A DNA stretch of 63,727 bases, filler included, from Dugesia japonica (GCA_001938525.1; 6 parts of 6 records of this genome joined end to end with filler, not necessarily neighbours in it), one strand, 5' to 3'; positions 4,601 through 53,789 are shown, counted from the first letter of the whole stretch. The notes: generated from the sequence alone by a model not told the origin. Made by a program: numbers and translations.

Positions 4601-5429
4601 ATTTATTATCTTCATTTTCTATATTAATAACTCCTGGTTTTGAAAATGGTAATTTAATATAAGTTGCTCCAGTTTGTGATTCATAATTAGAAAGATTTAA
4701 TTCATAATTTAATATATAGACCATGGTCCATCCTGAGCCTTCGCGATCTTCATCTTCAATATATCTTCCTAATTCTTGAAACATTTCATGTACACCATCA
4801 TCAATTTCAGTTAAAATTGTAAATGTTTTATTAATTGAGTATGATTTAAAATCTTTTTCAACATATTCATTATTTATTTCTTTTGCATATCTACATTTTA
4901 CTATCATACTTATAATAATTGCATCTTTTTTATGATTAAAATATTTTATAACAATTTGTCTCACTTCATTTTTAAATGCATTAATATTTCTAATAGGAAA
5001 AGAATATAATTTTTCCACATCATATTCCATTACTACTTTACTATTTAAAAAATAAGTTATATCAAAATCTGTGTAATGCCTAAATAAATCTCTAATACCT
5101 GCGTCATAATAAATTGCTTCTTCACCTGGAAGTTGGTCAAAATCAGCTTTAACTACCATTTGTTTATGTTTTAAAGAATTATAATGTGTTCTTGCATGAT
5201 TTTGTCTTAAAAATCTTTTATTAAAAATTTCACAGAATAATGGTACAATTTCATGATTACCACATATTGTTGCATTTAAATGAGATTGTAAATCATTAGC
5301 ACTTCTAAACATTTTATTACATTTATTACATTTAAAATTATCTGTTAATCTATAACAAGTTCTAGAACTAATGTGTCCTTTTAAACCTGCTAAATTCTTA
5401 AATGTTTTATTACAATTTTCACACTGCAT
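1641..5429 (-). pseudogene. polB: Protein-primed family B DNA polymerase (pPolB), 1262 codons in one frame with 4 internal stops
   Basis: Three N-terminal zinc fingers, EGSGW, INIENEDNKCFLYSILA, ExoI DFEA, EndoVII-type CYYC..DHNHFTGEFRGYAHSNCN and ExoII HNASSYD. Pol motifs are YIDENSLY, KLMLNAFYGK, YTDTDC and DD*R. In-frame stops at 3534 (TAA), 3129 (TAG), 2460 (TGA) and 1770 (TAA); terminal TAA at 1641. Confidence 0.95.
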
Positions 5430-5514
5430 TTTTATAAAGGAAAAATTTAATCATAGATATTAAAAAAGAGGATATTTTATATTTAAGAGGATTTATTTTA
5501 TATTTTAAAAGTAA

Positions 5515-5820
5515 TATGGGATTTGAAATATGAGTTTGATATATGGGTTTGATATATTAGTTTGATATATTTTTTATTTTTCATTTAACATTTCACATAA
5601 AATATATTTTTCATTTGACATTTGACATTTGACATAAAATATATGGGTTTGATATATGGGTTTGATATATTTTTTATTTTTCATTTGACATTTGACATTT
5701 TTTTGGGGATTTTATATTTGTTATTTGACATTTTTTTTGGGGATTTTATATTTGCTATTTAACATTTTTTTTTCATTTGACATTTCACATTTTATATTTA
5801 ACATTTTTTTTTCATTTGAA
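5515..5820. repeat. Subterminal short-repeat array of Polinton A (probable TIR interior)
   Basis: Interspersed copies of GATATATGGGTTT, TTTCATTTGACATTTGACAT and TTTTGGGGATTTTATATTTG upstream of the pPolB start. Confidence 0.75.
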
Positions 5821-6061
5821 GGGTACCCCCTTGAGTTAAAAAAGTCTTTTTCCTATTACTTATACTAATTAGTAATAACATATTGTGATGACATCATCAA
5901 TTTAATCATAAATTTATACAAAAAAACCAGATCGGTATTTGATTAAAACAAAAATAATTGTTAATAAAAATCTAATTTTGATTTCCTTTAATTTAAATAG
6001 AAAATATTTGCTATATTTATGACACACTTTTGGAAAATAATGATAAAAACTAGATATTGGT

Positions 6062-6094
<33 letters not shown>

Positions 6095-6507
6095 GTTTAT
6101 TAATTTTCTATTGCGTTTTCTTTCTATTATAACTCGAATAATATTAGCATTAATAACAATAATAATAAAAGTAATAATAATAATAAAGTATTATTTGATA
6201 ATACTAAATATAATATAAATATTCAGATTACTAATTGAAATACAGTTTTTTTTGGAAATTGTTTAAAAATATGTAAATTGAATTTATGCAAATGAGATGA
6301 ATTTGAGATCATTTAAATCAATCATACAAACAATAATTTATTTTCNAAATAAGAATTAAACAAGATTTATTTCAAGAAGGTTCTTTAATATAATTTAATT
6401 AGTTGATAAGATTGAATGTATGATATAAACCAGAAGAATTATATTTAATATCGAATTATGTCGACTATACTTTCAGAAAACTGATATAATTTTTTGTTGA
6501 ATAATAT

Positions 6508-9262
6508 CAGGAGTGACCAAAGCGTTGACCACGTGACTATTCCTAGTCGTTCACCTGTCTGATATGTACACATGTGATGCGCGTTCAACACAACGTGCGA
6601 GACATACCGTGTGATAGAGACAACAGGCTACAATCGGGAACTTAGACGATTATCGATGACAGTATCTTTCTGAAACCCTTTGGATCATGTCATACGTTGT
6701 ATTCCTTTAATTACCATGTTATTTTATATTATTGATTTTTTTTCTTAAATCATTAAAATTTGTTTAAATAAATTATCTTTTTTTGAAAAGATAAAATCTT
6801 TCAGTTGAAATGGGTTTTTTTCTGAAATAATTAATTCAATTTATTTTAATTTTATTCTTTTACTCACAATGATTTATTCGGCCACAAGTTTTAGTAAGTC
6901 GGAAATATATCACTATAATAATGAATGGGAACAGGAATTTGTTTTCACGATAGAAAAAAATAAATTCATTTTTATTATTTGTTTTTTAAGCGTTCCGCTT
7001 CCAAAAGGGTCAATGTTGAAAGAAACTTTACAACAGTTCATAATCAATATGAAGATAATTATTCATTTATCATGAAGTTACGGAAAGCAAAACTAGAACA
7101 ATTAATGACACAATTATATATGCAAAAGTCATTTCTTTTGAGATTAAGTATGAAGTAGAAAACATGCCTTATGGCCCAATTCAAGGTAGTTGAAATTTTA
7201 TAAAAACATATGAAGCCCTTTGAATAAGTCGAAATATGGAAAGAAAGTTTTATTAAAGCAGGAGAATTGTTGTTTCAAAGATTTGGCAATAAATGGGCAA
7301 TAAATGCATCAATAATAGAAATGTCGTTGACGAGAAACATTGTTATGCTTAGAACCGAAGCGACAAGTTGTGATTTAGAAGAGATTTTGAAAGAAAATAT
7401 TAAATGAAAGCAGATTCCTATACTAACAATTCATTTAATCAACGAATGTTACTGGTACCGCCCAGCTATCTATACTTATTTAAATGTGTTTCCAAGATAT
7501 GTCTGTCAGAGAATATCTGCTAACAATTTTACCGATGAAGGATCAAACGAGAAGTCAAGATATATAATTCGTTTATGTAATTCATTACTAAAACATCATT
7601 TCCAATAGATAAACTGGTATTGATTACGTTTCATGGAGCTCCTTCTATGGTTGGGAATCATATGGTAGAGATCTTTGTAAAAGTGATGAGGATATTAACT
7701 ACCATGACATGATTCATCACCTAAAATTGCGCTCAAAAATATTAAATTCAGATGATGTGATGAATTTCGTATTCAAAATAGCTAATTCTATTCGTGAAAG
7801 TAGTTTGGATCTTTTGCCAGAAAAAATACAAATCATATCCTCAATTGAAAAATAAGTGAATGTAGAATCTTGCTTTTCTTTCTGATGTTACAGGAAAGCC
7901 AAATCAATTAAATCTGTAACTTTAAAGAAAGAACAAAACATTGACTGAAATGGTTATTGACCTGAATACATTTAAAAGAAAACTTACATTCCTAGGAGCT
8001 CAATTGAGGCGAGGAAATTTAAAAATAATTTGAAAATATGGCAGCTAAATCTACAAATAAAATCTTATATGAATACAATCAATATGCTGATACGTCTCTT
8101 ATGAAAACATTTTGATAGAAGATTTACAAATAATTCAATATCAGAGGACATAATATTAATCATGTCATTCCGATTCGATGTTGAAACAAATATAGAGAAA
8201 TATCAATAAATTTTAGATGTTGACCAATTACTAGTTGAGAATAAAATCTTTAACTTAAAATGCGATATATTTTGGAAATAAAGAGCTTCGTCTCAAAATA
8301 ATTATTGGAATTTACTTTATGAAGAAAAATATCTATGTTTATGGAGATGTACAGCACATTTAACAACCATTTTTGATTCTACTAACCACTGAAAAACAAC
8401 ATTTTCTACCATTAATGTAATCAAAACAAAAGACTCTTCCGTTTGACAGATAACCATATGGCACGATCTTTACGAATAGCTAAAAGTACGTATAAACAGG
8501 AATATAAACAGTTTCCGGAAATATGCAATGTCATGTTTCCAGATAAATAATTAAGTTTCCACTACTTTAATAACTTCTTAAATAACTCGAAGTGACCGAA
8601 TTTAGTTGATTTTGGTGAAATATTTTCCCGCAATGGTCAATTTTGGATTTTTTTAAATTTTGAATTTTTTAATTTACAGAAATTCGTGGGTAAGTCCATC
8701 ACCAAAATTCCACCAAAATAGGCCATTGTGAGCAAATATTTGACCAAAATTAACAGAATTCGACCACTACGCGTATACTTATAACCAAAAGTGACAAAAC
8801 CGACCATCACGAGGAAATGTCTTACCAAAATTTCTTACATTCATTAAGTTGTTCATTTTCTTTATAAATAGTCTTAGAAAATACTGAAAAAAGTCAACAG
8901 TTAGAGAAATTTTTAATATAAGTATAAATAGGGGAAAATCTTCAAAAATCGGAGGAAAGTTACTAAATTAGGGGGAAATTAGCTATGTATTCCATGTTTT
9001 AGCGCGTTCTCCGAAACATCATCACAAATAATAGATATTATGTATTTACAAAACCATTAATAAGAGAATAAAAGAACATATTGTTTTATTTATGAACTAA
9101 TAAGTTTGTGAGACAAAATAATTATTTTCCGTTGATATTATCTATATTTTTTTTCAATTTGGACTTATTTTTGGCTTTAAATTACTACTTCTAATGCTAA
9201 TAGACTGCCACCAATAATTTCAACAGTAGGTCGCCCGTAGTGGTAAAGTTTAACCACTTCTG
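6508..9262 (+). mobile_element. Degenerate hAT transposon (GTF2IRD2/SPIN/Charlie-like) with decayed transposase at ~6870-8550
   Basis: Ends CAGGAGTGACCAAA...TTTAACCACTTCTG, with 8-bp flanks AATAATAT/AAAATTAT (6/8 match). Remnants include EWEQEFVF..IC and a C-terminal dimerisation region (F.ST....FS..N.IK...LTD.H....LR...MQCH.S). Confidence 0.8.
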
Positions 9263-10329
9263 AAAATTATCATATTTCATGCGTTTGTTTTAATGTTTTT
9301 ATTTTGTACTAGTAAAATTCATGAAAATTATTTTATATGAAGTGGAAGCTTTAAATAATATTGGTTAACATCAAAACAATGAAATTTCACTTCATTTCTT
9401 AACAATCATCTAGAATTATTTAAATTGATGGTAATTAATAATTTTTTTTATTTATTAATTATTATTTATTAGATGTTTTTTATCAACACATGTAATTTTC
9501 TATGGTGGTTAGTAACCTAAATTGTTAAAAAATATTTATTAGACTTTTGTTTGTTTTTATTGTTTATTTTGTAATAAACAGAAGTATCATCGAGCTAAAT
9601 TTTCAGATTCTCAAATATAGGTTTTCTAAAAATTTTAGAATCCATATTCCAAAGAAAACTAATAGTAAATCCATAAAGTATTATCCATAACGATAAGCGG
9701 GTGGTTCTTATTTTATTGTTATGTGAGCACTTGATAGATAAGTGATTGTATATTAATTATGTCAACAATTTTCAGACAATTATTAACATCTCTACCCTTG
9801 TCAACAATTGTCACACTTCTTTAACCTCCCATAATTTGGTCAATTAATGAACAACCCCAGGCCAACAGTTTAAATTCTTAAACATACAAACAAGAACTCA
9901 TACCAGGCATGAGTTTGTAAGTAAATATTGAAAACAAAGTTACAAAAAACTGTTTGTTTGAAAGCTGATTTTAATTCAAGTGCTTATTGGTATTACGTAA
10001 TAATTTATAATCTATTTAGAATTTATTTCTAAACGTTTATTCATTAAAAGTAAAATCAATCTTTTTTTCTTGTTATCAAAAACATTTAAATCTGAATATT
10101 ACAATTCAGCAAAATTATAATTAATGTATCAATAACACTATAATAAATAAGAATAAAATTAATAATTTTTAATAATTTGAATTTGAATTACACTTTTAAA
10201 AATTAATTAATATAATCATATATCCAAAATTAAAAATATAGAAATAAAATTTTTAGATGCTTTTAGACTTGAAAAACAAATTAAGCATAAAATATATATA
10301 ATCTAAAACACAAAATGGCATTGTAACAA

Positions 10330-41560: not shown

Positions 41561-42269
41561 CAAAAAAATTAAAAAAAATAAACAAAAAACGATTCTAGCA
41601 GAAGTGTTTTGGGTTTTAAGATAAACAAAACATAATCGCATGTAAAGGATGAAATGTAATTAAAAAATAAATGATTCAAGGAAATAAAAAATCAGTTGCC
41701 AATCAATCGACTAGTCGAACATTTGACGTTGTTGACAAGGTATTGATAAAAAATAGAATCGACATAAATATGAAGAAATTATAATGCACCGTATAAGTCG
41801 ACAAAAAGTATGCATGAACGAAATTATGAAATAACAGATATGAAAGGTAGAAAATTAATAAGAAATGTTGAAAGTTCAGGAATTTTATAGAATGGGTAAA
41901 TTAGGGATATAATTGATTATATGTTATTATTTTTTAATAAATATTTGAAATTAGTTTGTTTTTCAACCTAATCCTTGAGTTTAACAAAACAAATAACAAG
42001 GAACATGAATTAATCCAAGTAGTTAAATAAATTAAAAGAATAATACTAAAAAATAACAAAATAAATAAAAGTAAGAATAATAAATTTATTTACAAATAAT
42101 AATATTTTTAAGAAACTAATAATAGAATAATATTTATAGTAATTTAAAAATTTATACAAAAGAAATAATAACAACTAAAAAATTATTAAGAAATATAAGA
42201 AAAACAACATTTCGATCGAAGCTTTTAATTTAATGGAAAAAAATTAATACAAAACAAATAAATTATTAA

Positions 42270-42640: not shown

Positions 42641-44114
42641 CCATTAAGTTTGTTAGATGAGTTTGGAGAACTCATCTGATCATTAATATCAAAACTCGAT
42701 TCCATACCAAAATTTATTCTCAAAAAANNNNNNNNNNNNNNNNNNNNNNNNNNNNNNNNNNNNNNNNNNNNTTAATTAATTAANNNNNNNNNNNNNNNNN
42801 NNNNNNNNNNNNNNNNNNNNNNNNNNNATATCAAAATTCGAATTCATTACAACACTTTATTGAAAATCAAAACTATAACCAACAATATTTATTAAACAAA
42901 CAAATCAAAATCCCGTGTTTTCATTGGTGATCATTTTTCAAAATCTCAAACTGTAATTTATTTATTTAAAATTGAACTTAATTTATTTCAAACATTTTAT
43001 TTATTTATTTAAAATTTAAGGCAATTTCTTTCACCTTGAAAATTTTATNNNNNNNNNNNNNNNNNNNNNNNNNNNNNNNNNNNNNNNNNNNNNNNNNNNN
43101 NNNNNNNNNNNNNNNNNNNNNNNNNNNNNNNNNNNNNNNNNNNNNNNNNNNNNNNNNNNNNNNNNNNNNNNNNNNNNNNNNNNNNNNNNNNNNNNNNNNN
43201 NNNNNNNNNNNNNNNNNNNNNNNNNNNNNNNNNNNNNNNNNNNNNNNNNNNNNNNNNNNNNNNNNNNNNNNNNNNNNNNNNNNNNNNNNNNNNNNNNNNN
43301 NNNNGTTTACTGAAAAGTTTTAATTTATCATTTAAAATAAATTTTTGTTATTTAAGTTCTTTATCAAAACTTTAAATCTTTCTTTTAAACAAAAGATTTT
43401 AAAAATATGATCACCAATCACACAAAAAATTTAACTTGCTTTTAATAATCAAAATAGTTGATATAAAATTACAGTTATAAAAATTCTAACTTCACTGCGT
43501 AAGTTTCCTTATTTTAAATCCAAATTTACTGTTTTTTTTAAACTTTCCAAAAATGATGTTTTATGTTTCTTATATTTAAATCTGTCACAATCTTTTTTTT
43601 AAAATTTCAATACTAAAACAATTCAATTTTAATATCATCAATTTTTAAATTCTTCCTCACATTTATAATTATTTATTATTTATTTGTAGGTATAAAGAAG
43701 TGATAGAAAACCTAACGTTAGATCTAAATCAGATCTCGAACGATTTAACAAATACAAAAGAACAACTTGCATTATCAAATGAAGAAAATTCGTCAATCAA
43801 GAATAATCTCATAAAAATTCAAGAACAATTTGAAAGCTTTTTGAAAATGCATTTCAAACTTTCACATAATCAACCGATTTATTTATTACCGACTCCGAAT
43901 TTAATCTTGGAATGTTTAAATAACAAAAAATTAGAAAATTGTAAAAGTATTGTACAACTGGTAAATAGACCTTGATGAAATGATAAACATAATATTCTGA
44001 GATGATGGAAATACTTTGACATTAAATAAATATTACCATTATTGTTTGTTGTTCATAACAAGTTTGAAAACAAAAATCATTTCTTTTATTTTTACAATTA
44101 AACGTCTAAAAATA

Positions 44115-44310
44115 CCGTATTTTACGGTGTATAAGTCGCTACTTCTTTACTATTTAGAGACAAGTTCAACTAATACAAAGCAGCGGCTTATATGCTAAAT
44201 TTTTATCTATTTTATCATTAATTTTTTTGAGTAATAAAAAATTCAGTTTTTATCTTGTTTATATTTCTGCAAAATTTAAGTAGGTCCGACTTATAACCGC
44301 GAGAATACGG
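44115..44310. mobile_element. pogo/Tc2-type MITE
   Basis: TA|CCGTATTTTACGGTGTATAAGTCG...CGACTTATAACCGCGAGAATACGG|TA. Confidence 0.85.
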
Positions 44311-45392
44311 TAATTGAAAAGTTAATAACAAAACATTTAAAATGGGATTTTTCGATTATTAATGACATCATGTATTTTTAAGGGAAAAGTTTAGTGGGAA
44401 TTCTTGATTTCTATTTTAAGCTTTATAAATTTATACGCTAGTTAATTTCTCTAAAGAATTCATTTAATTTCGTCGATCAATAATCCAAAAAAACAGCCTC
44501 TTACATTTAAAGACTTTAAAACAATTCTCCACAAAGATGTAATCTTCTAATAATATAAATAAATTAAAATATTATTTTTGTTTTGATTTCATTTTATTCT
44601 CATTCCGAGTGTATATTGGTTTTTTAATTTTTATTTTATATTTAAATGTATAGTTGTCCATTTTCCACTTTAAATTAATTACTCCCGATGGGAAATTCTT
44701 TAGTCTCAATTTGAAAACTTTTATTCCCAATTTTAAGTTGAAAGGTAAAGGATTGTCCATTGATCTCAGCTTTCAATATGAGCTGTTATTTTAAATTAGA
44801 TATCGATATAAAATTTTAAAAAATTGTTTTTCTGTATTTTCAAGACAAAATTACCAAAATGTTATTTTTAGATGAATTTTTAGTACTCGTCGGATCATCA
44901 ACATCAAAATTTAACTCCATAGTGAAATTCATTTCAAAGAAAACTATAACATCATTATTTGTTTATTCAAACAAATTAAAATCCCGTGTTTTAATTGGTA
45001 ATCATTTTTTAAATTATTTTAAATTCATTTTAAGTTATTTTTAAAAAATTTACTGTATTCTTCAATAGTCATTTAAAAATTTTAAAACCACATTTTCGTT
45101 TATTAAAAATTTTAATTTTTAATTAATTGTCATTAAAATTTAAAACTAAATTTTCGTTTATTCAAAATCTTAATTTTTAATTAAATGTCGTTAAAATTTA
45201 AAACTAAATATTCGTTATTAAAAATTTTCATCTATAATTTAAATCGTTTTTTAAATAAAAGATATTCTAAAAAAATGATTACGAATCTCACAAAAATTTC
45301 AACCCGCTTTTTAAAACACACTTACACTTATATTTTTTAATCTATCATAGGATCACTACTTTTTTGACTAAACGATAAGAAATAAATTTAAT

Positions 45393-45612
45393 CAGTGTTT
45401 GTTAACCTTTTTGTTAGAGAAACCTTTTATAATTGTTGGGAGTCGCGAACCACCTCTTCCATTATGTAAAACGAAAAAAAGAAAACGCAAAGATATCAAT
45501 TATTACAAAATATTCGATTTTATTATGTTTTTTAAATTTACGAATTAAATTTTAAATTGAAGTCGAAGAACCCCATAAAAATCACTGATGAACGACAGGT
45601 TAAGAAACCCTG
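45393..45612. mobile_element. hAT-type MITE
   Basis: CAGTGTTTGTTAACCT...AGGTTAAGAAACCCTG; the TSD is poorly preserved. A related lone end is at 46625. Confidence 0.65.
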
Positions 45613-46836
45613 ACACAAATGAATAAATAGCAAATCTTAACAAGATAAACAAATANNNNNNNNNNNNNNNNNNNNNNNNNNNNNNNNNNNNNNNNNNNNN
45701 NNNNNNNNNNNNNNNNNNNNNNNNNNNNNNNATTGAAATACATTAAATGTTTGTCTTGAAGAGATCTGTCTATTGATAATCATGGAGAGGTCAAACGTTG
45801 ATGAGAAATTCTTATCTTTTGTATCCTTTTAATGATACTTGTATAAAAAATGTATGAAGCATCAATTATTCAGTGAACCGTTAAAGATGTTCAATGAATT
45901 ATGCCATTAATATTTATTGATAAAAACTGAATATTCCAACGAACATAAAACACCAAACTCACGGCGAGTAGAACGAAACAACGATTGATTGTTTGTAACT
46001 TCATATTAATATTAGATTAAAAATTACCAATTTTTTATTATTAACTACATCGTCAATATCTATATAATTTTAAATCGATTTTATTATTGGTTAATTATCT
46101 ATAAATTTAGCATTGTTATTTAGCATGGATATTTTCAGTTATTTAAACAACTAATAAATTTCTAAAATAATTAAGTTAAATTTTTTTTAAAAAATCAACA
46201 CTATTTCAAAAATAATTATATCCCATAATTTACTTTTATAAATTAAAATACAATTTGTACAATAATAATTAAAGTATAAAAATTTTTTTTAATTTTCAAA
46301 TTAAAAAATATATCAATAAATATTATTTTTTGGTAATTAAATTAGTCGACTTATTTTTCATTAATTTTTGCCTTTTTCAAATAGAAGTTAAAGATCGATG
46401 CAAAAAATTAATTAAAGATTGCTCAGTGATTTAATTAAGTCTCAATGAAAATGTGGAACAAATTAAAAAAATATCTTGGGGAAATTTTAAAAAATTTAAA
46501 GTAATACTAAATGAGTAATTGATGTTAAATGTTTGAAGAAATTGAAAAAAAAATCGACATGAAATATTTTAAAAAATATCTATATAAAAGTAACTAAATA
46601 AATTAAACCAAAAATCATTTTAATCAGTGTTTCCTAACCTGTATGCTTCATGAAAGTAGGACATCTGAGCATTAATATAACTTCTACCTTCCTTTTTTTA
46701 CCGATATTAAGTAAAAAATTGCAAACTTTTTTTGTTCACAGTTTATTCACTCCACCTTATAAGTGTGGGTGTCAGAAACTAATCGATTTTATTGGTGGGT
46801 TTAATAAAGGATTTATTTAAGGGATTTAAAAAAGTC

Positions 46837-46871
46837 AATTCCTGACGAAGACAAAGTCGAAATATCGAATT
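46837..46871 (+). ncRNA. Minimal type I hammerhead ribozyme in a Penelope-like pseudo-LTR
   Basis: AATTC-CTGACGA-A-GAC-AAA-GTC-GAAA-TATC-GAATT. Stem I is AATTC/GAATT, stem II is GAC/GTC, and stem III is the palindrome ATAT. Predicted cleavage is after C46866. Confidence 0.8.
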
Positions 46872-47851
46872 TTTATCAAATAACAAAAAAAAATTTTTGA
46901 TCGAAGCTTTTATTTTAAATGAATTTAGAAAAACTATCAATGGTTACGTCCAACAATTATTCTCGCAATAATTGCAATTATGAAATCAATTTTAATATTA
47001 AAATTTCAAAAAATTAGTTAATTAAAACAAGAATGGTCTTTTTCGTTGATTTTCCGTGAAAAAATAAAATTTCCGAGTAGTTACGAAACATATTGCGAAA
47101 TTAATATTATCGCGAATTTCATAGCCCTTACGTAACCTTTTGCGTAATCATGTATGTATAACGTCGCAATGGTTCACTGATTACCTAATAAATTGTAAGA
47201 AAATTCGTCCAACTCTACGTTAATTGCGTCTATGGGGGGGTGGTGCGGTGCGCCACTATCCTGCTACTTCTTTCTTCCATGTTAAATGTTACCAACTTTG
47301 GATAAATGCAGATTTCTTTAAAAATATTTCTTTATATATAGTTCTTGTTAACAACATTAAATGTTTAAGTGTGTTAACGTTTAATATTTTAATGAATATT
47401 TTATTAATTTCAATTAAATAAAGTATTTATATATAAAGACCATTAGATTAATAAGACAAAATTTTCAAACACACCAAAATATAACACAATCGATAACGAA
47501 TAAATTAGAAAATCTCGAGATAACTTGAAATTAATTTTCTGAAAGTATTTGAAGTAAAAAGTAAAGTTTTGATTTTGGATTAATGCGAATTATCATGACT
47601 AATCACCTATCAAGGGCTAATCACCTTTAAGTTATGTAATTTCCGTAAAGAAATGGTGGATGTATTATAAATTATAGAAATTTTAAATTAATAATCAATT
47701 ATGAAGATAATTTGTAGCCGACAAGCATGTATTTATTATTATCCAATCAGAAAATCAACTAATCATAATTTCAGATAGATTCAGACTAGAAGTTTGTATA
47801 AAATCCTAATTTAATTGAGATTGAAATTACTAAACTATAAACTTTGTAAAA

Positions 47852-48985
47852 ATGAATAATTTAGGAGAATTAAAAGCAAATTACAGTCATATTGATACTC
47901 CGTACGACATGGTTTATTCTTGCAGTTTGTTAAAGGATGCAAATTCAACCGGAAATTTAATGACATGCTATTTAAGTAAGGTTTTAGGTATTACTTCGGC
48001 ATATATTTTCCCAGTCTTTGCCAGTTTCGGTTTAATTAGTAATTTATTGATTTTCTATATATTTTTTATTAAATATTCTAAAAAAACTCGACAAACGGTC
48101 TTACTTTCATTTTTAGCTATCGCAGATTTTTCCTTTATTTTATCTTTCGGTTGGTTATGGGTTTTTCCAGCTAAAGGTTTACCATTTGCCAGTGACGGGG
48201 CAATATATTTATTTTTAATAAATACAAATGACTTTTCTTGTAGATTATTTAGAGGTTTTTATACAGTTTGTTCAACATGGACTTACGGTGCATTTCTAAC
48301 TATATGTTTTGATAGAATGTTGGCTATTTATTTCCCAATGAAAATGATAAATTTCGGCTATAAATCAGCAATAATCGGATCGTTTTCTATGTTGATAATT
48401 TGTTGTTTAGTAACATGTCTTTATACGGCATTTGTAAGATCAATAAAAATCGGATCGAAAATATTTTGTACAGCTATGTCAGGTTATAATTCATCGCTTT
48501 TAGATTTTTTGAAAATCTACCGAATATTATTTGTATATTCTGGAATTGTTCCATTAGGAATGATTCTATTACTAAACATGTCATTGTTATGGAAAATCAT
48601 TGAACAACAAAGTAAAATGAAAAAACTCAGTGAGTCTGTATCGAAAAATACGAAAAAAGAAATCAAAGCAACAATTATTGTTTTATTATTAACAATTTTC
48701 TTTCTCATTGGTAGTGTACCACTAATTGCGTTGGATTTTCTTATTATTTCAACGCAAAATGTTAATGATGGATCGAAAGAGATACTCGATCAGTTGCAAA
48801 TCTTCTACAATTTAATTGATACTGGAGCTCATTTGACGTTTTTGATGGAATCGATAAATATTTTTATTTACTACACAAAAATGAAACGATTCAGAATGGA
48901 ATGTCTAAAGCTTATTGGAATAAAATTCAAAAACACTCAAAACCAACGAACATATCAAGAAAATATTTCAACCAACCAATTATAA
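47852..48985 (+). CDS. Intronless rhodopsin-class orphan GPCR, platyhelminth PROF1-like, 377 aa
   Basis: Seven hydrophobic segments with TM1 G..SN, TM2 LAIAD, WVFPAKGLPFASDG, a Cys before TM3, FDRMLAIYFP (DRY variant), ECL2 FC and TM7 NIFIY. The ORF is intact. Confidence 0.92.
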   Translation: MNNLGELKANYSHIDTPYDMVYSCSLLKDANSTGNLMTCYLSKVLGITSAYIFPVFASFGLISNLLIFYIFFIKYSKKTRQTVLLSFLAIADFSFILSFGWLWVFPAKGLPFASDGAIYLFLINTNDFSCRLFRGFYTVCSTWTYGAFLTICFDRMLAIYFPMKMINFGYKSAIIGSFSMLIICCLVTCLYTAFVRSIKIGSKIFCTAMSGYNSSLLDFLKIYRILFVYSGIVPLGMILLLNMSLLWKIIEQQSKMKKLSESVSKNTKKEIKATIIVLLLTIFFLIGSVPLIALDFLIISTQNVNDGSKEILDQLQIFYNLIDTGAHLTFLMESINIFIYYTKMKRFRMECLKLIGIKFKNTQNQRTYQENISTNQL

Positions 48986-49211
48986 TTCTTCATAACACCT
49001 TTTCATTATGACCTGCACCATTCCTAGTGCGGAATGTTTACAGTTGCATCGCAAATAAATTGATTTATAGTTTTCCTTCGTTATATATAATAAGAATATA
49101 ATTAAATATAATAATAATAATTATTATAATAATAATTATTATTATAATTATAATAATATAAGATAGTAATAATAATAATATAATATAACAACAGTATTTA
49201 AATACGTTTTT

Positions 49212-49468
49212 AATAAAAGTTTTATTTAAAAAAAATTTAACAAGGAAAGATCACAGTTGCTGTTCTTCTATTTTCAATATTTTTGCATAGTCTTCTCAAT
49301 TAAAAACAATTAAAAATCAATAAAAATTGATTTTACTAATTGATTTGTAATAAAAATTTACTGAACAACAGTTTCTGAATAAGGCTATTCTAAAATATTG
49401 GAAATGAAAGAACAGTAATTTTTATCTTTGCTTGTTAAAAGTTTGTTTAAATGAAATTTTTTTGTTAT
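49212..49468. repeat. Degenerate fold-back element (~70-bp inverted arms)
   Basis: TTTAACAAGGAAAGAT...CTGTTCTTCTATTTTCAATATTTT versus AAAATATTGGAAATGAAAGAACAG...ATCTTTGCTTGTTAAA. Confidence 0.65.
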
Positions 49469-49545
49469 AAACTTTATTGACAGATCAATGGTTAAAAAAT
49501 ACTTTTTAAGTTTAAAACAAATTTTAAAAATAGATTTAAGAATAA

Positions 49546-49700
49546 TCTATATAAATAAAATCTAAATGTTCGTTTCTTTAAAATCGATAAACTCAGAAAG
49601 GTTTTCACCGACTGCCTTGTAATTTCGAAATTTTTTAGCATTGATGAACAAATAATTCGGTATTATGGCCATTGTGAGATGATTACCCAATCAGTGCTAG
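49546..49700 (+). mobile_element. Short non-autonomous Helitron-like element
   Basis: A|TCTATATAAATAAAA...CTAG|T ends; the subterminal hairpin is decayed. Confidence 0.55.
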
Positions 49701-49759
49701 TATAAATAAATTATGTTTGATTGTATATGTGTGTGTTTATTTATTTTTTGTAGTCCCTT

Positions 49760-50000
49760 ATTATAATTTCATAGATTTCTCCAAGACTGTTGGCTTTAAG
49801 ACAATATATAGAAGCCTGCGATGTCATATTTTTAGAAAATATATTTTAGAAACTGTATTTCGACTTCTTAACAGCCATCATTATCTCAAACAATTTATAA
49901 GAGCAAAGTCTATACGTTTTGAATTCAAGCAATGGGCAATGTGTCATAGTGCAACTGAATATTTCTACAATGTCTAATTATATTAAGGAAGATAGGAGGG
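49760..50000 (+). pseudogene. Non-LTR (LINE) RT fragment
   Basis: FIDFSK motif (cf. F.DF.KAFD) and a weak downstream QG-region remnant. Confidence 0.45.
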
Positions 50001-50653
50001 AGATTTCCAAGAAACGGGACTAGGCACATCAGTCATAATGAGAATTCGACTATATGATAGATGTTAAAAATGAGAGAATTGTTTAAATTGTTTCAAGCTG
50101 TGCAAAAATTGCAATAAGCTATATGCAGATTGTTACCACTGATGTTTAAATTTTAGTAAGCTATCAGCAAATGATGCGTAAATTGTAACCAACTATGTAA
50201 ATTTGAGACATTAGTTTGAAATTTTTTATGTCTAAATTTATTTTGATAACATAATTTTTAAAAGTTCTGTAGATTTACACAAAATATTAATAAATATATA
50301 CTAAGTCCATAACCAATTTCATTAAAAAGTATTGACCCGCGATTAAAATATAGACTAATCTTTATTAGGATTTATTAAATTTCCAATAATTGCAGTAAAG
50401 TTAATTAAATTTTATTAATTTCACCAAAGTATATCGAATATAATAGGTTTAATAGATTTATAGTATTCATTAGGGGTACTTTTTTGTATTTATTTTGTAG
50501 AGTTCTGTAGTTGTATTTACACAGTGGACCAATAGTTATAGTAAAATAATGGAAAACCATTGACCAATTTTATTGAGATTTATTAAATTTCGAAGACTAT
50601 AGCTATTGTATTTACACAGAATGCCAATGGATGAGATAAGCTAATGTTATATA

Positions 50654-52116
50654 CAGTAATCCCCCGCTTTGCAAACATGATGCGTTCTGCAAAATTTGTC
50701 GTATATTGAACAATCATATAGCGAACTCAATATTTGTATGGAATTCCATTAAAAATAAATAGATACGTTCCAGTGAATAAAAATATTCGTAAAACGAAAT
50801 CTATTTTAGTAAATGTTCGTATTAAAAATAGATAGATGCGTACCTAAAATTTTTGTTCCATGAAACCCTACTCTATTGTTATGAAACAATATGATATGGA
50901 AAGAAAATCAAAACATTTATTCATTTTAAACATAAAATTACATTATTAATTAATCATTATTATAAAAAAATAAAATTTAGCATTATTAAGCCAAAAAAGA
51001 TTAATTATAAATATTAGATTTATTCCAATATGTCATATGACTCCTCGTCTAAGCTAGTATATGGATGATCTTTCATCTGAATTGGCATCTGAAATAGATT
51101 CTATGTTCTTAAATATAAGTAGTTGCTAAATTTTTGGGAGGTATAACCATTGGCTTCAACAATTTGTTTAAATTTAGCAGGATACATTTTTGTCGCTTCA
51201 ACATCTGCACTTGCTGCTTCTCTAGACGTTTTTATATTATGTAATGAGTGACGTTTTTTAAAGCGATCTAATCAAACTTTGCTAGTTAAAAACTGTTCAG
51301 ACTGAGAACCGTCCCCATTTTGCATTATTAAATACTGGCGAAGGCTATTAGCCTTTTCTTGTATAATAGTTGTGCTTATTGTAATATTTTGTTGTGATTG
51401 ATGGTCTATCCACACGCTAAGCATTTGTTCATTTTCCGCCATTACCGCACTTTGTGTGGAAACATTTTTTGCCGTTAAAGATGTTACTCTTTGTGCACTC
51501 GATCTTATTTTATCTACATTTTTTTAATTCTGCAATTAGTTGAAGCAGCAAGTCCTTAAGCATTTTCTATTTTATTATTTTTCTCATCTGCTTCAAGCCG
51601 TGTTAAAACATCAAGCTTTACCTCTTTTTTTGCAGAAGTGCTGGGAATTGTATTTCTAGTGCATTTACCAGACATTTCTTTATCAAAATTAGCCCTTATA
51701 TAAAAAATAAATAATTATGTAATATTATTCACTTAAACAACATACAAATTGCACTAAAGAAAATTTCAATTAATATAATTATATCTTTTTTTGAGAATTC
51801 CCAAATTAGAGTTGAAGAATTTGTTTATAATAGCGAAGTTTTCATAGTTATTAGGAATTTTATATTTTATAACTCATTTATTTAATATAAAAGCTGTGAT
51901 CAAAATTTAGGTTTTATTTATTGATATTGAATTTTTATCCAATATCAATAAATAAAACCTAAATTTTGATCAAAGCTTTTATATTAAATGAATTCTATAA
52001 AATGATCAATGTTTATGTCCAACAATTATTCTCGCAATAATTGCAATTGGGTTATTATTCGTGTTCGTAACTTTGAAATTTTGTAAAACGAGCTTTCGAA
52101 AAGCGGGGGATTACTG
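50654..52116 (-). mobile_element. Tigger/pogo internal-deletion derivative; transposase N-terminus at ~51130-51675
   Basis: TA|CAGTAATCCCCCGCTTT...AAAGCGGGGGATTACTG|TA. CENP-B-type HTH remnants EQMLSVWI..IIQEKA..F.TSKV*LDRFKKRHSLHNIK..EAASAD. No DDE domain. Confidence 0.92.
51880..52050. repeat. Penelope-like pLTR copy with a 50-bp fold-back, nested in Tigger
   Basis: Arms 51880-51929 and 51940-51989 are 49/50 complementary with a 10-nt loop. 51929-52048 aligns with 46867-46979. Confidence 0.85.
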
Positions 52117-52669
52117 TAATAAACCAATGCATAGAGTAAGCAAATGTGTAAGTAAAAGCCCATATGTTACTGTATTGACACAGTAAGCTCATTGGACACA
52201 GAAAACCAGTGTGACACAGTAATGTCAATGAACAAAATAAGTAAATGAACACAATAAATTACATTTCATGTAGTATTTTATCACCATACNNNNNNNNNNN
52301 NNNNNNNNNNNNCAAATTATTGTATTTAATTTTAGACTGTTAATAGAATCCAGATCAATTATGGTCAACTGAAGATAAAATTATTTGAAATAAATCTTAT
52401 AATTTATATTTGTGTGTTTTTAAATTTTATCAATAGATTTATTTTTTGTGAGTTTCTATTTTATAAATCGTATTTTATTTTGTTTCAATTTTGTAAATGT
52501 TTTATAAATTGGTATAAATATGGTATAAACTGTTTAGTTTGTTTCTTCTTTCCACTCTTTCTTTTTTACAATACGCTTTTTTGATCGTTTCTCTTTATTC
52601 ATTTTAGGAATACTTTTGATCTGATCAACTACAATTTTTTTAAATTTTGTCATTTTAAAAGTATAATAA

Positions 52670-53065
52670 TTACTTAGTTTGTTTGTACACAGTAATACCA
52701 TCAGGATTGAAAATATCGGTTCTCACCCTCAGTTCGTCTGAACATTGTTATGTAAAGTCGAGAAAAATATAACCATGTGATTTTATTGTTGCATCTTGAA
52801 ATGATTCAATAAGAAATTGTCTATTATTAGGATAAGCCTGTCTTGCTAGAAAATTAACAACTGTTTTATCTATTGGATTTTTAAATAGAACCAAGTATTG
52901 TATATTTAAATTACGCGTCCTATGACTTCCACCTTGATGGAATAATATTTGAGTAATGATTATAACAGTCACATTACAATGTCTGCTTATTTTTGTAAAT
53001 AAATTATTAAAGTCTTTTTCTTTGTTTGCCTCCTGATACAGATCATCTACTACGATAACATCTTT
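52670..53065 (-). pseudogene. Polinton A32/FtsK-like packaging ATPase, C-terminal half
   Basis: Walker B IVVDDL, LFTKISRHCNVTVIIITQ, RTRNLNIQYLVLFKNPID, HGYIFLDF and LRVRTDIF. One internal stop; Walker A is missing. Confidence 0.9.
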
Positions 53066-53789
53066 TTTTTTATTAAAATATTACTACTTAAATAGAGTTA
53101 ATTAAAGAGACAAATTAATAAATAACATTTATTATAATAATGACATATATATATTAAATATCAATATTTTGCATCATTTCTTCTTGTTTCAATGATAATG
53201 CATTTATTTTGCTCATATNNNNNNNNNNNNNNNNNNNNNNNNNNNNNNNNNNNNNNNNNNNNTTAATTAATTAANNNNNNNNNNNNNNNNNNNNNNNNNN
53301 NNNNNNNNNNNNNNNNNNAAAAGCTTTTCTTAATGAAAACATCAAAATAAAAATAAACATCACTAGAACAATTTACTAATACTTTTATTTATCTTATAGG
53401 ATGATCGGCCAACCGTCCACTTCGTCTTTGATCCATTGGCTTATTTTTACAATTCATTCCACTCTCACAGTTTTGAGTTCTGTTTATTAACGATAACTCG
53501 AAATCTGGATATTTCTATTTAATTAATTTTCGCCGTATTCTATTATCATTTCTCTTTAATTTGCTCCAATTTTTCTCTAATATTAATCATGTTCGTCCAA
53601 CTTTAGACTTCATTTATTAATCAGCGTTTAATTTCCTTTGAATTTGCAGCTACTTTGCACCAGATTTTTATCTTTTAACTTTTATCAGCTTGAAATCAGC
53701 GTTTAATTTCTTTTCAACTTCATCAAATATAATTCGTTTTCCGAATTTCATGATCCATTTTTCTTCTTTCAATTCTTCATCTAAAAGCT

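What the first reader, a model, noticed from the sequence alone, without database searches (positions are those of the whole stretch)
51880..52050. Second pLTR copy begins at the predicted ribozyme cut site and is capped by a 50-bp fold-back
Seen: 51929-52048 (GAATTTTTATC...TTTTGATC.AAGCTTTTAT..TAAATGAATT...GTCCAACAATTATTCTCGCAATAATTGCAATT) matches the sequence just 3' of the hammerhead cleavage site at 46866. The ribozyme core is absent and replaced by a 49/50 inverted copy of the downstream sequence. The unit is nested in a Tigger. Inference: a molecular fossil of ribozyme-cleaved RNA being reverse transcribed, with the cDNA end folding back to self-prime. That would link cleavage in vivo to the inverted 5' ends known for Penelope insertions. 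A few bases of microhomology (ATAT.G) blur the exact junction. A third partial copy is at ~42205-42240.
Basis: partly seen in the sequence, partly recalled or inferred. Interest (0 to 1): 0.75.

Follow-up and report, generated by a model that had tools for sequence, protein, structure and literature searches.

The report
Hammerhead repeat copy with snap-back end
A truncated copy of a very abundant, roughly 150-base repeat that carries a hammerhead ribozyme starts within a few bases of the predicted ribozyme cut and is capped by a 57-69-base fold-back. This fits reverse transcription that ran to an RNA end and then primed on itself, but one copy cannot show that the ribozyme made that end.

Summary
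46862-46979 and 51924-52048 are homologous and end at the same base. Arms 51876-51932 and 51937-51993 form a 95% inverted repeat, extendable to 51864-52003. The ribozyme core is missing from the second copy, which lies inside a Tigger/pogo-type deletion derivative.

Two framing points change. No Penelope ORF lies between the copies; a GPCR gene does. The repeat is a unit of about 150 nt (46829/30 to 46979/86) present at roughly 10^5 copy-equivalents in three DNA runs. So these are two independent insertions of a short minimal-hammerhead repeat, not the two pLTRs of one element.

The single-copy TTTT centre indicates an intramolecular snap-back of a nascent strand, not two joined cDNAs. The switch point can only be placed between -5 and +2 of the predicted cut. 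Related copies carry a native 9-bp inverted repeat there, which could seed the fold-back without cleavage.

The best-supported family 5' ends and inverted joints lie elsewhere (46829/30 and 46885-88). The RNA run showed no ends at the cut. Self-priming at Penelope palindromic junctions was proposed in 2013.

Verdict: RT snap-back about 0.7; ribozyme-cleaved template about 0.4.

The parts
46829..46979 (+). Copy 1: full-length unit of the high-copy repeat. An alternative 3' end is at 46986.
   Evidence: read laying: summed contig depth is 0.6-1.08 million in bin 46837-47023, against about 10 for single-copy sequence. Loose ends from hundreds of contigs lie at 46829/46830 (before) and 46979/46986 (behind).
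46837..46871 (+). Minimal type-I hammerhead-like motif. Helix I AATTC (46837-41) pairs with GAATT (46867-71). CUGACGA is at 46842-48, a bulged A at 46849, helix II GAC-AAA-GUC at 46850-58, GAA at 46859-61 and A-UA-U at 46862-65. C17 is 46866, and the predicted cut is 46866|46867.
   Evidence: Read directly. Pattern CTGANGA-N7-17-GAAA: 3 hits against 0.24 expected. There is a weak RAGATH-1 hammerhead alignment of 13.9 bits, E 3.9, in the same register. The features match the min-HHR list in PMC4209133. No Rfam family reaches threshold.
46954..46979 (+). 3'-terminal stem-loop (8 bp, 5-nt loop) plus CAATT. This is the likely site where reverse transcription starts.
   Evidence: It is identical in copy 2 (52023-52048). 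By analogy, the anole PLE starts RT internally in a stem-loop about 90 nt 3' of the hammerhead cut (PMC11167929).
51929..52048 (+). Copy 2, direct part: the unit from the predicted cut-site G to the family 3' terminus. Homology with native copies could reach back to 51924.
   Evidence: Loose ends behind 52049 come from 192 contigs in X1.
51933..51936 (.). Single-copy centre (TTTT) of the fold-back.
51864..51932 (-). Inverted arm: reverse complement of 51937-52003. It lacks the unit's 3' terminus.
   Evidence: It shares copy-2-specific letters, including the partner of T52003, where the family has C (table 3).
50654..52116 (-). Tigger/pogo-type deletion derivative that hosts copy 2. TA duplications lie at 50652-53 and 52117-18.
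   Evidence: 24-nt TIRs, 92% complementary (I24). HTH_Tnp_Tc5 at 51275-51442(-), E 1.8e-7.

Best explanation
Region 51864-52048 is an independent, 5'-truncated insertion of a very abundant short retro-repeat, sitting inside a Tigger/pogo remnant. The repeat unit is about 150 nt. It has a minimal hammerhead near its 5' end and a stem-loop at its 3' end.

Proposed sequence of events:
1. Reverse transcription started at the 3' stem-loop. This is inferred from the shared discrete 3' end.
2. It copied about 120 nt and stopped within -5 to +2 nt of the predicted hammerhead cut.
3. The free cDNA 3' end (...ATTC-3') folded back on GGAT/GAAT four bases away. Related copies have a native 9-bp inverted repeat at this spot.
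4. The cDNA then copied itself for about 57-69 nt before it was joined to the upstream target DNA.

This is a snap-back 5' junction of target-primed reverse transcription.
For: Shown:
- The two copies share a discrete 3' end and have unrelated flanks.
- The unit is present at roughly 10^5 copy-equivalents, with sharp termini, in three DNA runs from three studies.
- The inverted arm copies the adjacent direct part, including its private variants, and lacks the unit's 3' terminus. It is therefore not a second insertion.
- The centre is a single-copy TTTT. Two run-off cDNAs joined head to head would give ...AAAAATTC|GAATTTTT... instead.
- The only mismatch near the turn is A51930 against C51939. 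Both letters match copy 1, and on the cDNA-sense strand the pair is a G-T wobble. This fits a pre-existing primer segment annealed with a wobble.
- The hammerhead core is absent, and homology with native upstream sequence ends at 51924.

From the literature:
- Snap-back 5' junctions are an observed minor class of R2 TPRT insertions (PMC11331408).
- Palindromes at Penelope inverted junctions have been read as self-priming (PMC3846280).
- The anole PLE starts RT internally, about 90 nt 3' of the hammerhead cut (PMC11167929).
Against: - This is one locus only.
- The insertion's left boundary and any target-site duplication could not be defined, because no uninterrupted Tigger copy was obtained.
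- The mismatch near the turn could be a later mutation. There are 3 mismatches in 57 positions, so the chance that one falls in the first four is about 0.2.
- No RT gene was found in the piece, so the enzyme is inferred.
- Read-level support for the hairpin was not obtainable. A tip-deleted form (joint 51920 to 51966) occurs in two runs.

Against the cleavage sub-claim:
- Most copies keep the uncut hammerhead.
- No loose-end class at 46867 is among those listed.
- Helix II is only 3 bp.
- 119 RNA reads show no ends at the cut.
- In the anole PLE, cleavage was not needed in vitro and no reads ended at the cut (PMC11167929).
Confidence: 0.7

Rival explanations
1. Reader's narrower version, contained within the best explanation. 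The template was a linear unit RNA already cut by its hammerhead. RT ran off the 5'-OH G (51929), and the cDNA end ATTC-3' snapped back. The copy would then be a fossil of ribozyme cleavage in vivo.
For: The cut site lies inside the 7-nt switch window 51924-51930, which covers about 5% of the unit by chance. T51928 is what fold-back copying predicts, whereas copy 1 and two other contig classes have C there. A 4-bp stem with a 4-nt loop ends exactly at the G. Running out of template is the usual trigger for RT strand switches. One head-to-tail joint class (52040 to 46829) fits the tandem or circular templates of retrozymes, which need cleavage (PMC7229834).
Against: Native copies have a 9-bp inverted repeat across the site, so the position is explained without cleavage. 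No 46867 class appears among the best-supported loose ends or joints. There is no RNA evidence. Min-HHRs cleave poorly in vitro (PMC4209133). n = 1.
Confidence: 0.4
2. DNA-level origin. A normal full-length copy was inserted first. Later a break or a replication template switch at the native short inverted repeat deleted the hammerhead part and built the palindrome.
For: Short inverted repeats are known seeds of palindromes (general knowledge). A native inverted repeat is present in related copies. Palindrome instability is visible in the tip-deleted joint 51920 to 51966.
Against: It needs a break exactly beside the inverted repeat, then hairpin opening and rejoining to the left flank with loss of about 40 nt of the unit. 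That is more steps than a snap-back during insertion. Such events usually give large palindromes or small quasi-palindrome corrections, not a 60-nt arm.
Confidence: 0.12
3. Two cDNAs: priming on both target strands (twin priming, or the two-strand extension seen for the anole PLE) produced a head-to-head pair.
For: The PLE protein cleaves and extends both strands in vitro (PMC11167929). Head-to-head joints exist in this family (46828-30 with 46885-88, opposite strands, in three runs).
Against: The left arm lacks the unit's 3' terminus. The centre carries a single TTTT instead of the duplicated, fully symmetric AAAAATTC|GAATTTTT. Both arms share private variants.
Confidence: 0.05
4. Assembly artefact: the inverted arm was created by misassembly of a high-copy repeat.
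For: Palindromes and repeats at 10^5 copies are hard to assemble. No read-level confirmation was possible.
Against: The arms differ at 3 of 57 positions and by an indel, as in an aged real duplication. A related tip-deleted hairpin joint occurs in two independent runs.
Confidence: 0.03

Closest known systems
Minimal hammerhead (min-HHR) repeats of Penelope-like elements, and animal non-LTR retrozymes (PMC4209133, PMC7229834, bioRxiv 10.64898/2026.07.22.740005)
   Same: Type-I minimal hammerhead with CUGANGA/GAAA boxes, an extra base before helix II, a G10.1-C11.1 pair and a palindromic AUAU in place of helix III. AT-rich, very high copy, mostly scattered single motifs. At least one head-to-tail joint class.
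   Different: No RT/GIY-YIG ORF nearby. The unit is only about 150 nt, with the hammerhead about 12 nt from its 5' end. Helix II is 3 bp, against 7-8 bp in the Schistosoma families. No circular-RNA junction or tandem array was shown here.
Palindromic inverted junctions of Penelope elements, interpreted as self-priming (Arkhipova et al. 2013, PMC3846280; structure summarised in PMC8557442)
   Same: An inverted repeat at the 5' side with a palindrome at the junction, explained by self-priming.
   Different: Typical cases keep a whole inverted pLTR, so two hammerheads lie on opposite strands. Here the arm is a 57-69-nt copy of the adjacent sequence, the hammerhead is missing, and the turn lies at the predicted cut.
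Snap-back 5' junctions in R2 target-primed reverse transcription (PMC11331408), and ribozyme-defined 5' ends of R2 (PMC3774820)
   Same: [quoted passage not shown] In R2 a self-cleaving ribozyme sets the RNA 5' end, and so the junction.
   Different: R2 uses an HDV-like ribozyme at the element's very 5' end and is site-specific. Here the ribozyme is a hammerhead whose cleavage would remove the first 38 nt of the genomic unit.
L1 5' inversions by twin priming (from general knowledge, not checked in a paper here)
   Same: An inverted 5' segment made during TPRT.
   Different: Twin priming inverts a different, more 5' segment and leaves only small duplications or deletions at the joint. Here the same segment is present in both orientations around a single-copy loop.

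Membership tests
Minimal hammerhead ribozyme of PLE type | Conserved core boxes CUGANGA and GAAA, with H17 not G | tested here: met
   46842-48 CTGACGA, 46859-62 GAAA, C46866.
Minimal hammerhead ribozyme of PLE type | [quoted passage not shown] | tested here: met
   AATTC/GAATT 5 bp; A46849; G46850-C46858; AUAU at 46862-65 (register confirmed by the alignment).
Minimal hammerhead ribozyme of PLE type | Stable helix II (4 bp canonical; 6-8 bp in described PLE families) | tested here: inconclusive
   Only GAC/GUC (3 bp) with an AAA loop in copy 1. The MFE fold does not recover the hammerhead (z = -0.23).
Minimal hammerhead ribozyme of PLE type | Match to a curated hammerhead covariance model | tested here: not met
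   No Rfam hammerhead at E <= 1. The best is RAGATH-1-hammerhead at 13.9 bits, against a gathering score of 56.3. Rfam models assume a helix III, which min-HHRs lack.
Minimal hammerhead ribozyme of PLE type | Self-cleavage, and covariation among copies | not testable with these tools
   No other copies could be fetched, and there is no bench assay.
Penelope-like element (pLTR-ORF-pLTR) | RT plus GIY-YIG ORF flanked by the two repeats | tested here: not met
   The only long ORF between the copies is a 7tm_1 GPCR. No RT or EN domain occurs in any ORF of 60 aa or more.
Penelope-like element (pLTR-ORF-pLTR) | Discrete 3' end, with alternative 'tail' ends, from internal RT initiation in a stem-loop | tested here: inconclusive
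   Two 3' end classes 7 nt apart (46979 and 46986) lie next to an 8-bp stem-loop. This resembles PMC11167929, but the enzyme is unknown.
Animal non-LTR retrozyme | Head-to-tail tandem units, each with a type-I hammerhead | tested here: inconclusive
   One joint class runs from 52040 to 46829 with 29 letters between, in X1 and X3. Most contigs end in unrelated flanks, meaning dispersed monomers.
Animal non-LTR retrozyme | Unit-length linear and circular RNAs | tested here: not met
   RNA run X17: 119 reads on both strands, 93% running on into unlike sequence, with no begin/end peaks and no RNA-supported joints among those listed. This is one run, about 6% sampled, so the test is weak.
Tigger/pogo DNA transposon | Terminal inverted repeats with a TA duplication, and CENP-B/Tc5-type DNA-binding domains | tested here: met
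   TIRs at 50654 and 52116 with TA on both sides. HTH_Tnp_Tc5 E 1.8e-7. No DDE domain remains, so this is a deletion derivative.

The most novel reading that the evidence does not exclude
Hammerhead-cleaved, unit-length linear RNAs of this repeat family are used as templates for reverse transcription in vivo. Their run-off cDNA ends self-prime, leaving fold-back insertions that begin exactly at the ribozyme cut. This would be the first genomic record of in vivo cleavage by a Penelope-type minimal hammerhead. With roughly 10^5 copies in this genome, the record could be counted statistically.
Probability: 0.35. Interest if true: 0.7.

Novelty: new member of a known kind. Interest (0 to 1): 0.42.

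Why it matters
What the hammerheads of Penelope-type elements do in vivo is an open question. [quoted passage not shown]

Insertions that begin at the cut site would be direct genomic evidence that cleaved RNA reaches the reverse transcriptase. This locus alone does not prove that.

It does show that the genome holds a family of roughly 10^5 copies, with a defined 3' end and a defined predicted cut. A simple count of 5' ends in that family could settle the question.

Otherwise the locus is an ordinary truncated retro-copy with a snap-back junction, which is a known minor outcome of target-primed reverse transcription.

Tried and rejected
1. Fetching other copies. An exact 21-mer from the conserved 3' stem-loop found nothing in viral contigs. 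It found four chance matches in metagenome contigs: one GC-rich bacterial contig and three copies of an unrelated coding region. So I could not make my own junction census.

2. Rfam. There is no hammerhead hit at E <= 1 over the piece. The MIR7127 hit on the hairpin (33 bits against a gathering score of 100) only reflects the hairpin shape, so I rejected it as a miRNA call.

4. Target-site duplication of copy 2. GTTATTA at 51847-53 and 52051-57 is a candidate. However, Tigger-like contigs align up to 51863, and the palindrome may start at 51864. This is left unresolved.

5. A TSD guess for copy 1 (ATGAAA) was dropped, because 165 contigs share the letters up to 46986.

6. The large loose-end class at 46885 is most likely an effect of the internal A-run. 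The loose letters are poly-A-rich, about 24 nt long, and contigs break in homopolymers. I do not count it as a true 5' end.

7. The joint 50557 to 52120 with 37 inserted letters was considered as an empty Tigger site. It looks more like a shorter related element, so I did not use it.

8. CpG deamination as the cause of T51928 is unlikely to be favoured here, since CpG o/e is 1.15. Ordinary mutation remains possible.

9. The organism was not identified. The GPCR's nearest Atlas clusters are molluscan, rotiferan, nematode and flatworm.

Full report
**1. What is in the sequence**

The piece (42828-53218) has 24.6% G+C and no CpG depletion (o/e 1.15).

Region 46862-46979 is homologous to 51924-52048. 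Identity is 83% over 125 aligned columns, with blastn E 2e-28 within the piece. Both copies end at the same base (...GCAATT at 46979 and 52048). The end follows an identical 8-bp stem-loop, CAATTATT-CTCGC-AATAATTG. The flanks after that base are unrelated: ATGAAATC after copy 1 and GGGTTATT after copy 2.

Upstream of copy 2 lies an inverted copy of its own first part. Arms 51876-51932 and 51937-51993 are complementary at 54 of 57 positions around a 4-nt centre, TTTT. With one small indel the palindrome extends to 51864-52003. Ten shuffles of the piece gave at most 22 nt under the same criteria. The DNA hairpin folds at -48 kcal/mol, z = -16.

**2. The hammerhead**

Copy 1 reads as follows:
- Helix I: AATTC at 46837-41.
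- Core box: CTGACGA at 46842-48.
- Bulged A at 46849.
- Helix II: GAC-AAA-GTC at 46850-58.
- GAA at 46859-61, then A-TA-T at 46862-65.
- C46866, followed by GAATT at 46867-71, which pairs back to helix I.

This meets the features that Cervera and de la Pena list for Penelope-type minimal hammerheads: an extra base before helix II, a G10.1-C11.1 pair, and a palindromic AUAU in place of helix III (PMC4209133).

The bare pattern CTGANGA-N7-17-GAAA occurs 3 times in the window, against 0.24 expected. Rfam gives no significant hammerhead hit. Its only alignment, to RAGATH-1-hammerhead at 13.9 bits and E 3.9, uses the same register and the same cut. Helix II has only 3 bp, and the single-molecule fold does not recover the motif. 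So this is a plausible min-HHR, not a demonstrated ribozyme.

In copy 2, similarity to the native upstream sequence cannot be carried left of 51924. The catalytic core is absent.

**3.

No Penelope ORF lies between the copies. The only long ORF is a rhodopsin-type GPCR at 47852-48985 (7tm_1, E 7e-13). No ORF of 60 aa or more carries an RT or endonuclease domain.

I laid contigs of three DNA runs from three studies on 46650-52250. Summed depth was 0.6-1.08 million over 46837-47023 and over 51886-52072. Single-copy contigs such as the GPCR gene had depth of about 10. That corresponds to roughly 10^5 copy-equivalents.

Hundreds of contigs leave the alignment at four places: 46829/46830 (5' side), and 46979, 46986 and 52049 (3' side). 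Their flanking letters are unrelated and AT-rich. The repeat is therefore a discrete unit of about 150 nt, mostly dispersed. Its hammerhead starts about 12 nt from the 5' end, and its 3' end has two variants 7 nt apart.

This resembles the internal, two-site RT initiation in a stem-loop about 90 nt 3' of the hammerhead cut in the anole Penelope element (PMC11167929). It also resembles the 'single, widespread' min-HHR copies and non-LTR retrozymes described elsewhere (PMC4209133, PMC7229834, bioRxiv 10.64898/2026.07.22.740005). One head-to-tail joint class (52040 to 46829, 29 letters between) appears in two runs.

The two copies in the window are thus independent insertions of a short non-autonomous repeat, not the two pLTRs of one element.

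Copy 2 does sit in a Tigger/pogo-type deletion derivative. The element spans 50654-52116, with TA on both sides and 24-nt TIRs (I24). A HTH_Tnp_Tc5 remnant has E 1.8e-7.

**4. How the fold-back was made**

The left arm lacks the unit's 3' terminus. It also shares copy 2's private variants, for example the partner of T52003, where the family has C (table 3). So it is a copy of the adjacent sequence and not a second insertion.

The centre is a single TTTT. If two cDNAs had each run to the same RNA end and been joined, the centre would be the fully symmetric ...AAAAATTC|GAATTTTT.... A single-copy loop indicates an intramolecular snap-back.

The structure fits a minus-strand cDNA ending in ...GGATAAAAATTC-3'. 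Its last four bases pair with GGAT across the AAAA loop, and the strand then copies itself.

The only mismatch near the turn is A51930 against C51939. Both letters agree with copy 1, and on the cDNA-sense strand the pair is a G-T wobble. That is the one place where a mismatch can exist from the moment of formation, because the primer segment is not copied. The other two mismatches (51896 and 51879) must be later changes. This argument is suggestive only: with 3 mismatches in 57 positions, one falls in the first four about 20% of the time.

Snap-back 5' junctions are an experimentally observed minor class of R2 target-primed insertions (PMC11331408). Arkhipova et al. already interpreted palindromes at Penelope inverted junctions as self-priming (PMC3846280).

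**5. Was the RNA end made by the ribozyme?**

The last templated base lies between 51924 and 51930, which is -5 to +2 of the predicted cut. The site is included, but the junction is not resolved to it.

Two other contig classes of the same subfamily read ...GAAATATCGAATTGTTATTCAATATCAATAAAT... and ...GGTCGAAATATCGATTTGTTATTCAATATC... (tables 7 and 5c). Native copies therefore carry an imperfect 9-bp inverted repeat, ATATCGAAT / ATTCAATAT, that straddles the cut. It would also place a fold-back here on uncut RNA, by a pause and strand switch, or at the DNA level.

T51928 is what fold-back copying predicts, and C is the common family letter. One base cannot decide the matter.

At family level, the best-supported loose ends are at 46829/30 and 46885. 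The 46885 class is most likely an effect of the internal A-run on contigs. The best-supported inverted joints pair 46828-30 with 46885-88. No class at 46867 is listed. However, only the top rows of 4,165 loose ends and 435 joints are shown, so a minority class is not excluded.

RNA run X17 placed 119 reads on the unit, on both strands. Of these, 93% continue into unrelated sequence, and there is no pile-up of ends. In the anole element, cleavage was dispensable in vitro and no reads ended at the cut (PMC11167929).

Weighing these points, I put about 0.7 on RT snap-back. Within that, I put about 0.4 on a hammerhead-cut template and about 0.3 on an uncut or randomly ended one. The remainder is about 0.12 for a later DNA-level palindrome, 0.05 for two-strand priming and 0.03 for an assembly artefact.

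**6. Comparison and novelty**

The unit belongs with Penelope-type min-HHR repeats and animal retrozymes by motif and abundance. Membership in a Penelope element proper fails locally, because there is no ORF. Retrozyme hallmarks (tandem arrays, circular RNA) were not shown.

The fold-back belongs with known snap-back or self-primed junctions. What would be new is the tie to the ribozyme cut. The nearest precedent is R2, whose HDV-like ribozyme sets the RNA 5' end and hence the 5' junction (PMC3774820).

The locus is a worthwhile lead rather than a discovery. Its practical value is that this genome offers roughly 10^5 copies in which the distribution of 5' ends around +1 can be counted.

**7. 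Limits**

- No other genomic copies could be retrieved.
- The single read-laying run shows only the best-supported rows.
- The insertion's left boundary and any target duplication are undefined.
- The organism is unidentified. Its GPCR resembles spiralian and nematode receptors.
- N stretches were left untouched.

Noticed in passing
window 51920-51966: Contigs in runs X2 and X3 (not X1) join 51920 to 51966. They skip 45 nt between two TTGAT direct repeats, which removes the hairpin tip. This is either a tip-deleted allele or a paralogue of the same palindrome, and is typical palindrome instability.
   Followed up: partly
window 46828-46830 with 46885-46888: Eight of the 15 best-supported joints are 'opposite strands' joints between the unit's 5' terminus and the start of its internal A-run, across the three DNA runs. 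This is a recurrent head-to-head arrangement in the family that does not involve the ribozyme cut.
   Followed up: partly
window 47852-48985 (+): Intact 377-aa intronless rhodopsin-type GPCR ORF (7tm_1, E 7e-13). It is single-copy by contig depth (about 10) and lies between the two repeat copies.
   Followed up: partly
window 45394-45612 and 46626-46645: A MITE-like element of about 220 bp with CAGTGTTTGTTAACC... / ...GGTTAAGAAACCCTG ends. A second left end (CAGTGTTTCCTAACC) lies about 200 bp upstream of copy 1. The TIRs were read by eye and not confirmed by the repeat tool.
   Followed up: no
window 45077-45250: Three tandem copies of a 58-nt AT-rich unit, 100%, 88% and 67% identical to the first copy.
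   Followed up: no
window 50203-50576 and 49268-49454: Other repeat families flank the Tigger. Summed contig depth is 10,000-35,000 in the first region and 5,000-10,000 in the second. They are unrelated to the hammerhead unit.
   Followed up: no
window 46935 and 52003: Where the family majority reads ...AAAACGATCAA..., copy 1 has T at 46935 (family G) and copy 2 has T at 52003 (family C). So each copy has lost the same consensus CG dinucleotide, at different bases.
   Followed up: no
window 52748-52972 (-): A 74-aa ORF (…LVLFKNPIDKTVVNFLARQAYP…). From memory it resembles the C-terminus of Polinton/Maverick-type packaging ATPases. There is no Pfam hit at E <= 1, so this is unverified.
   Followed up: partly
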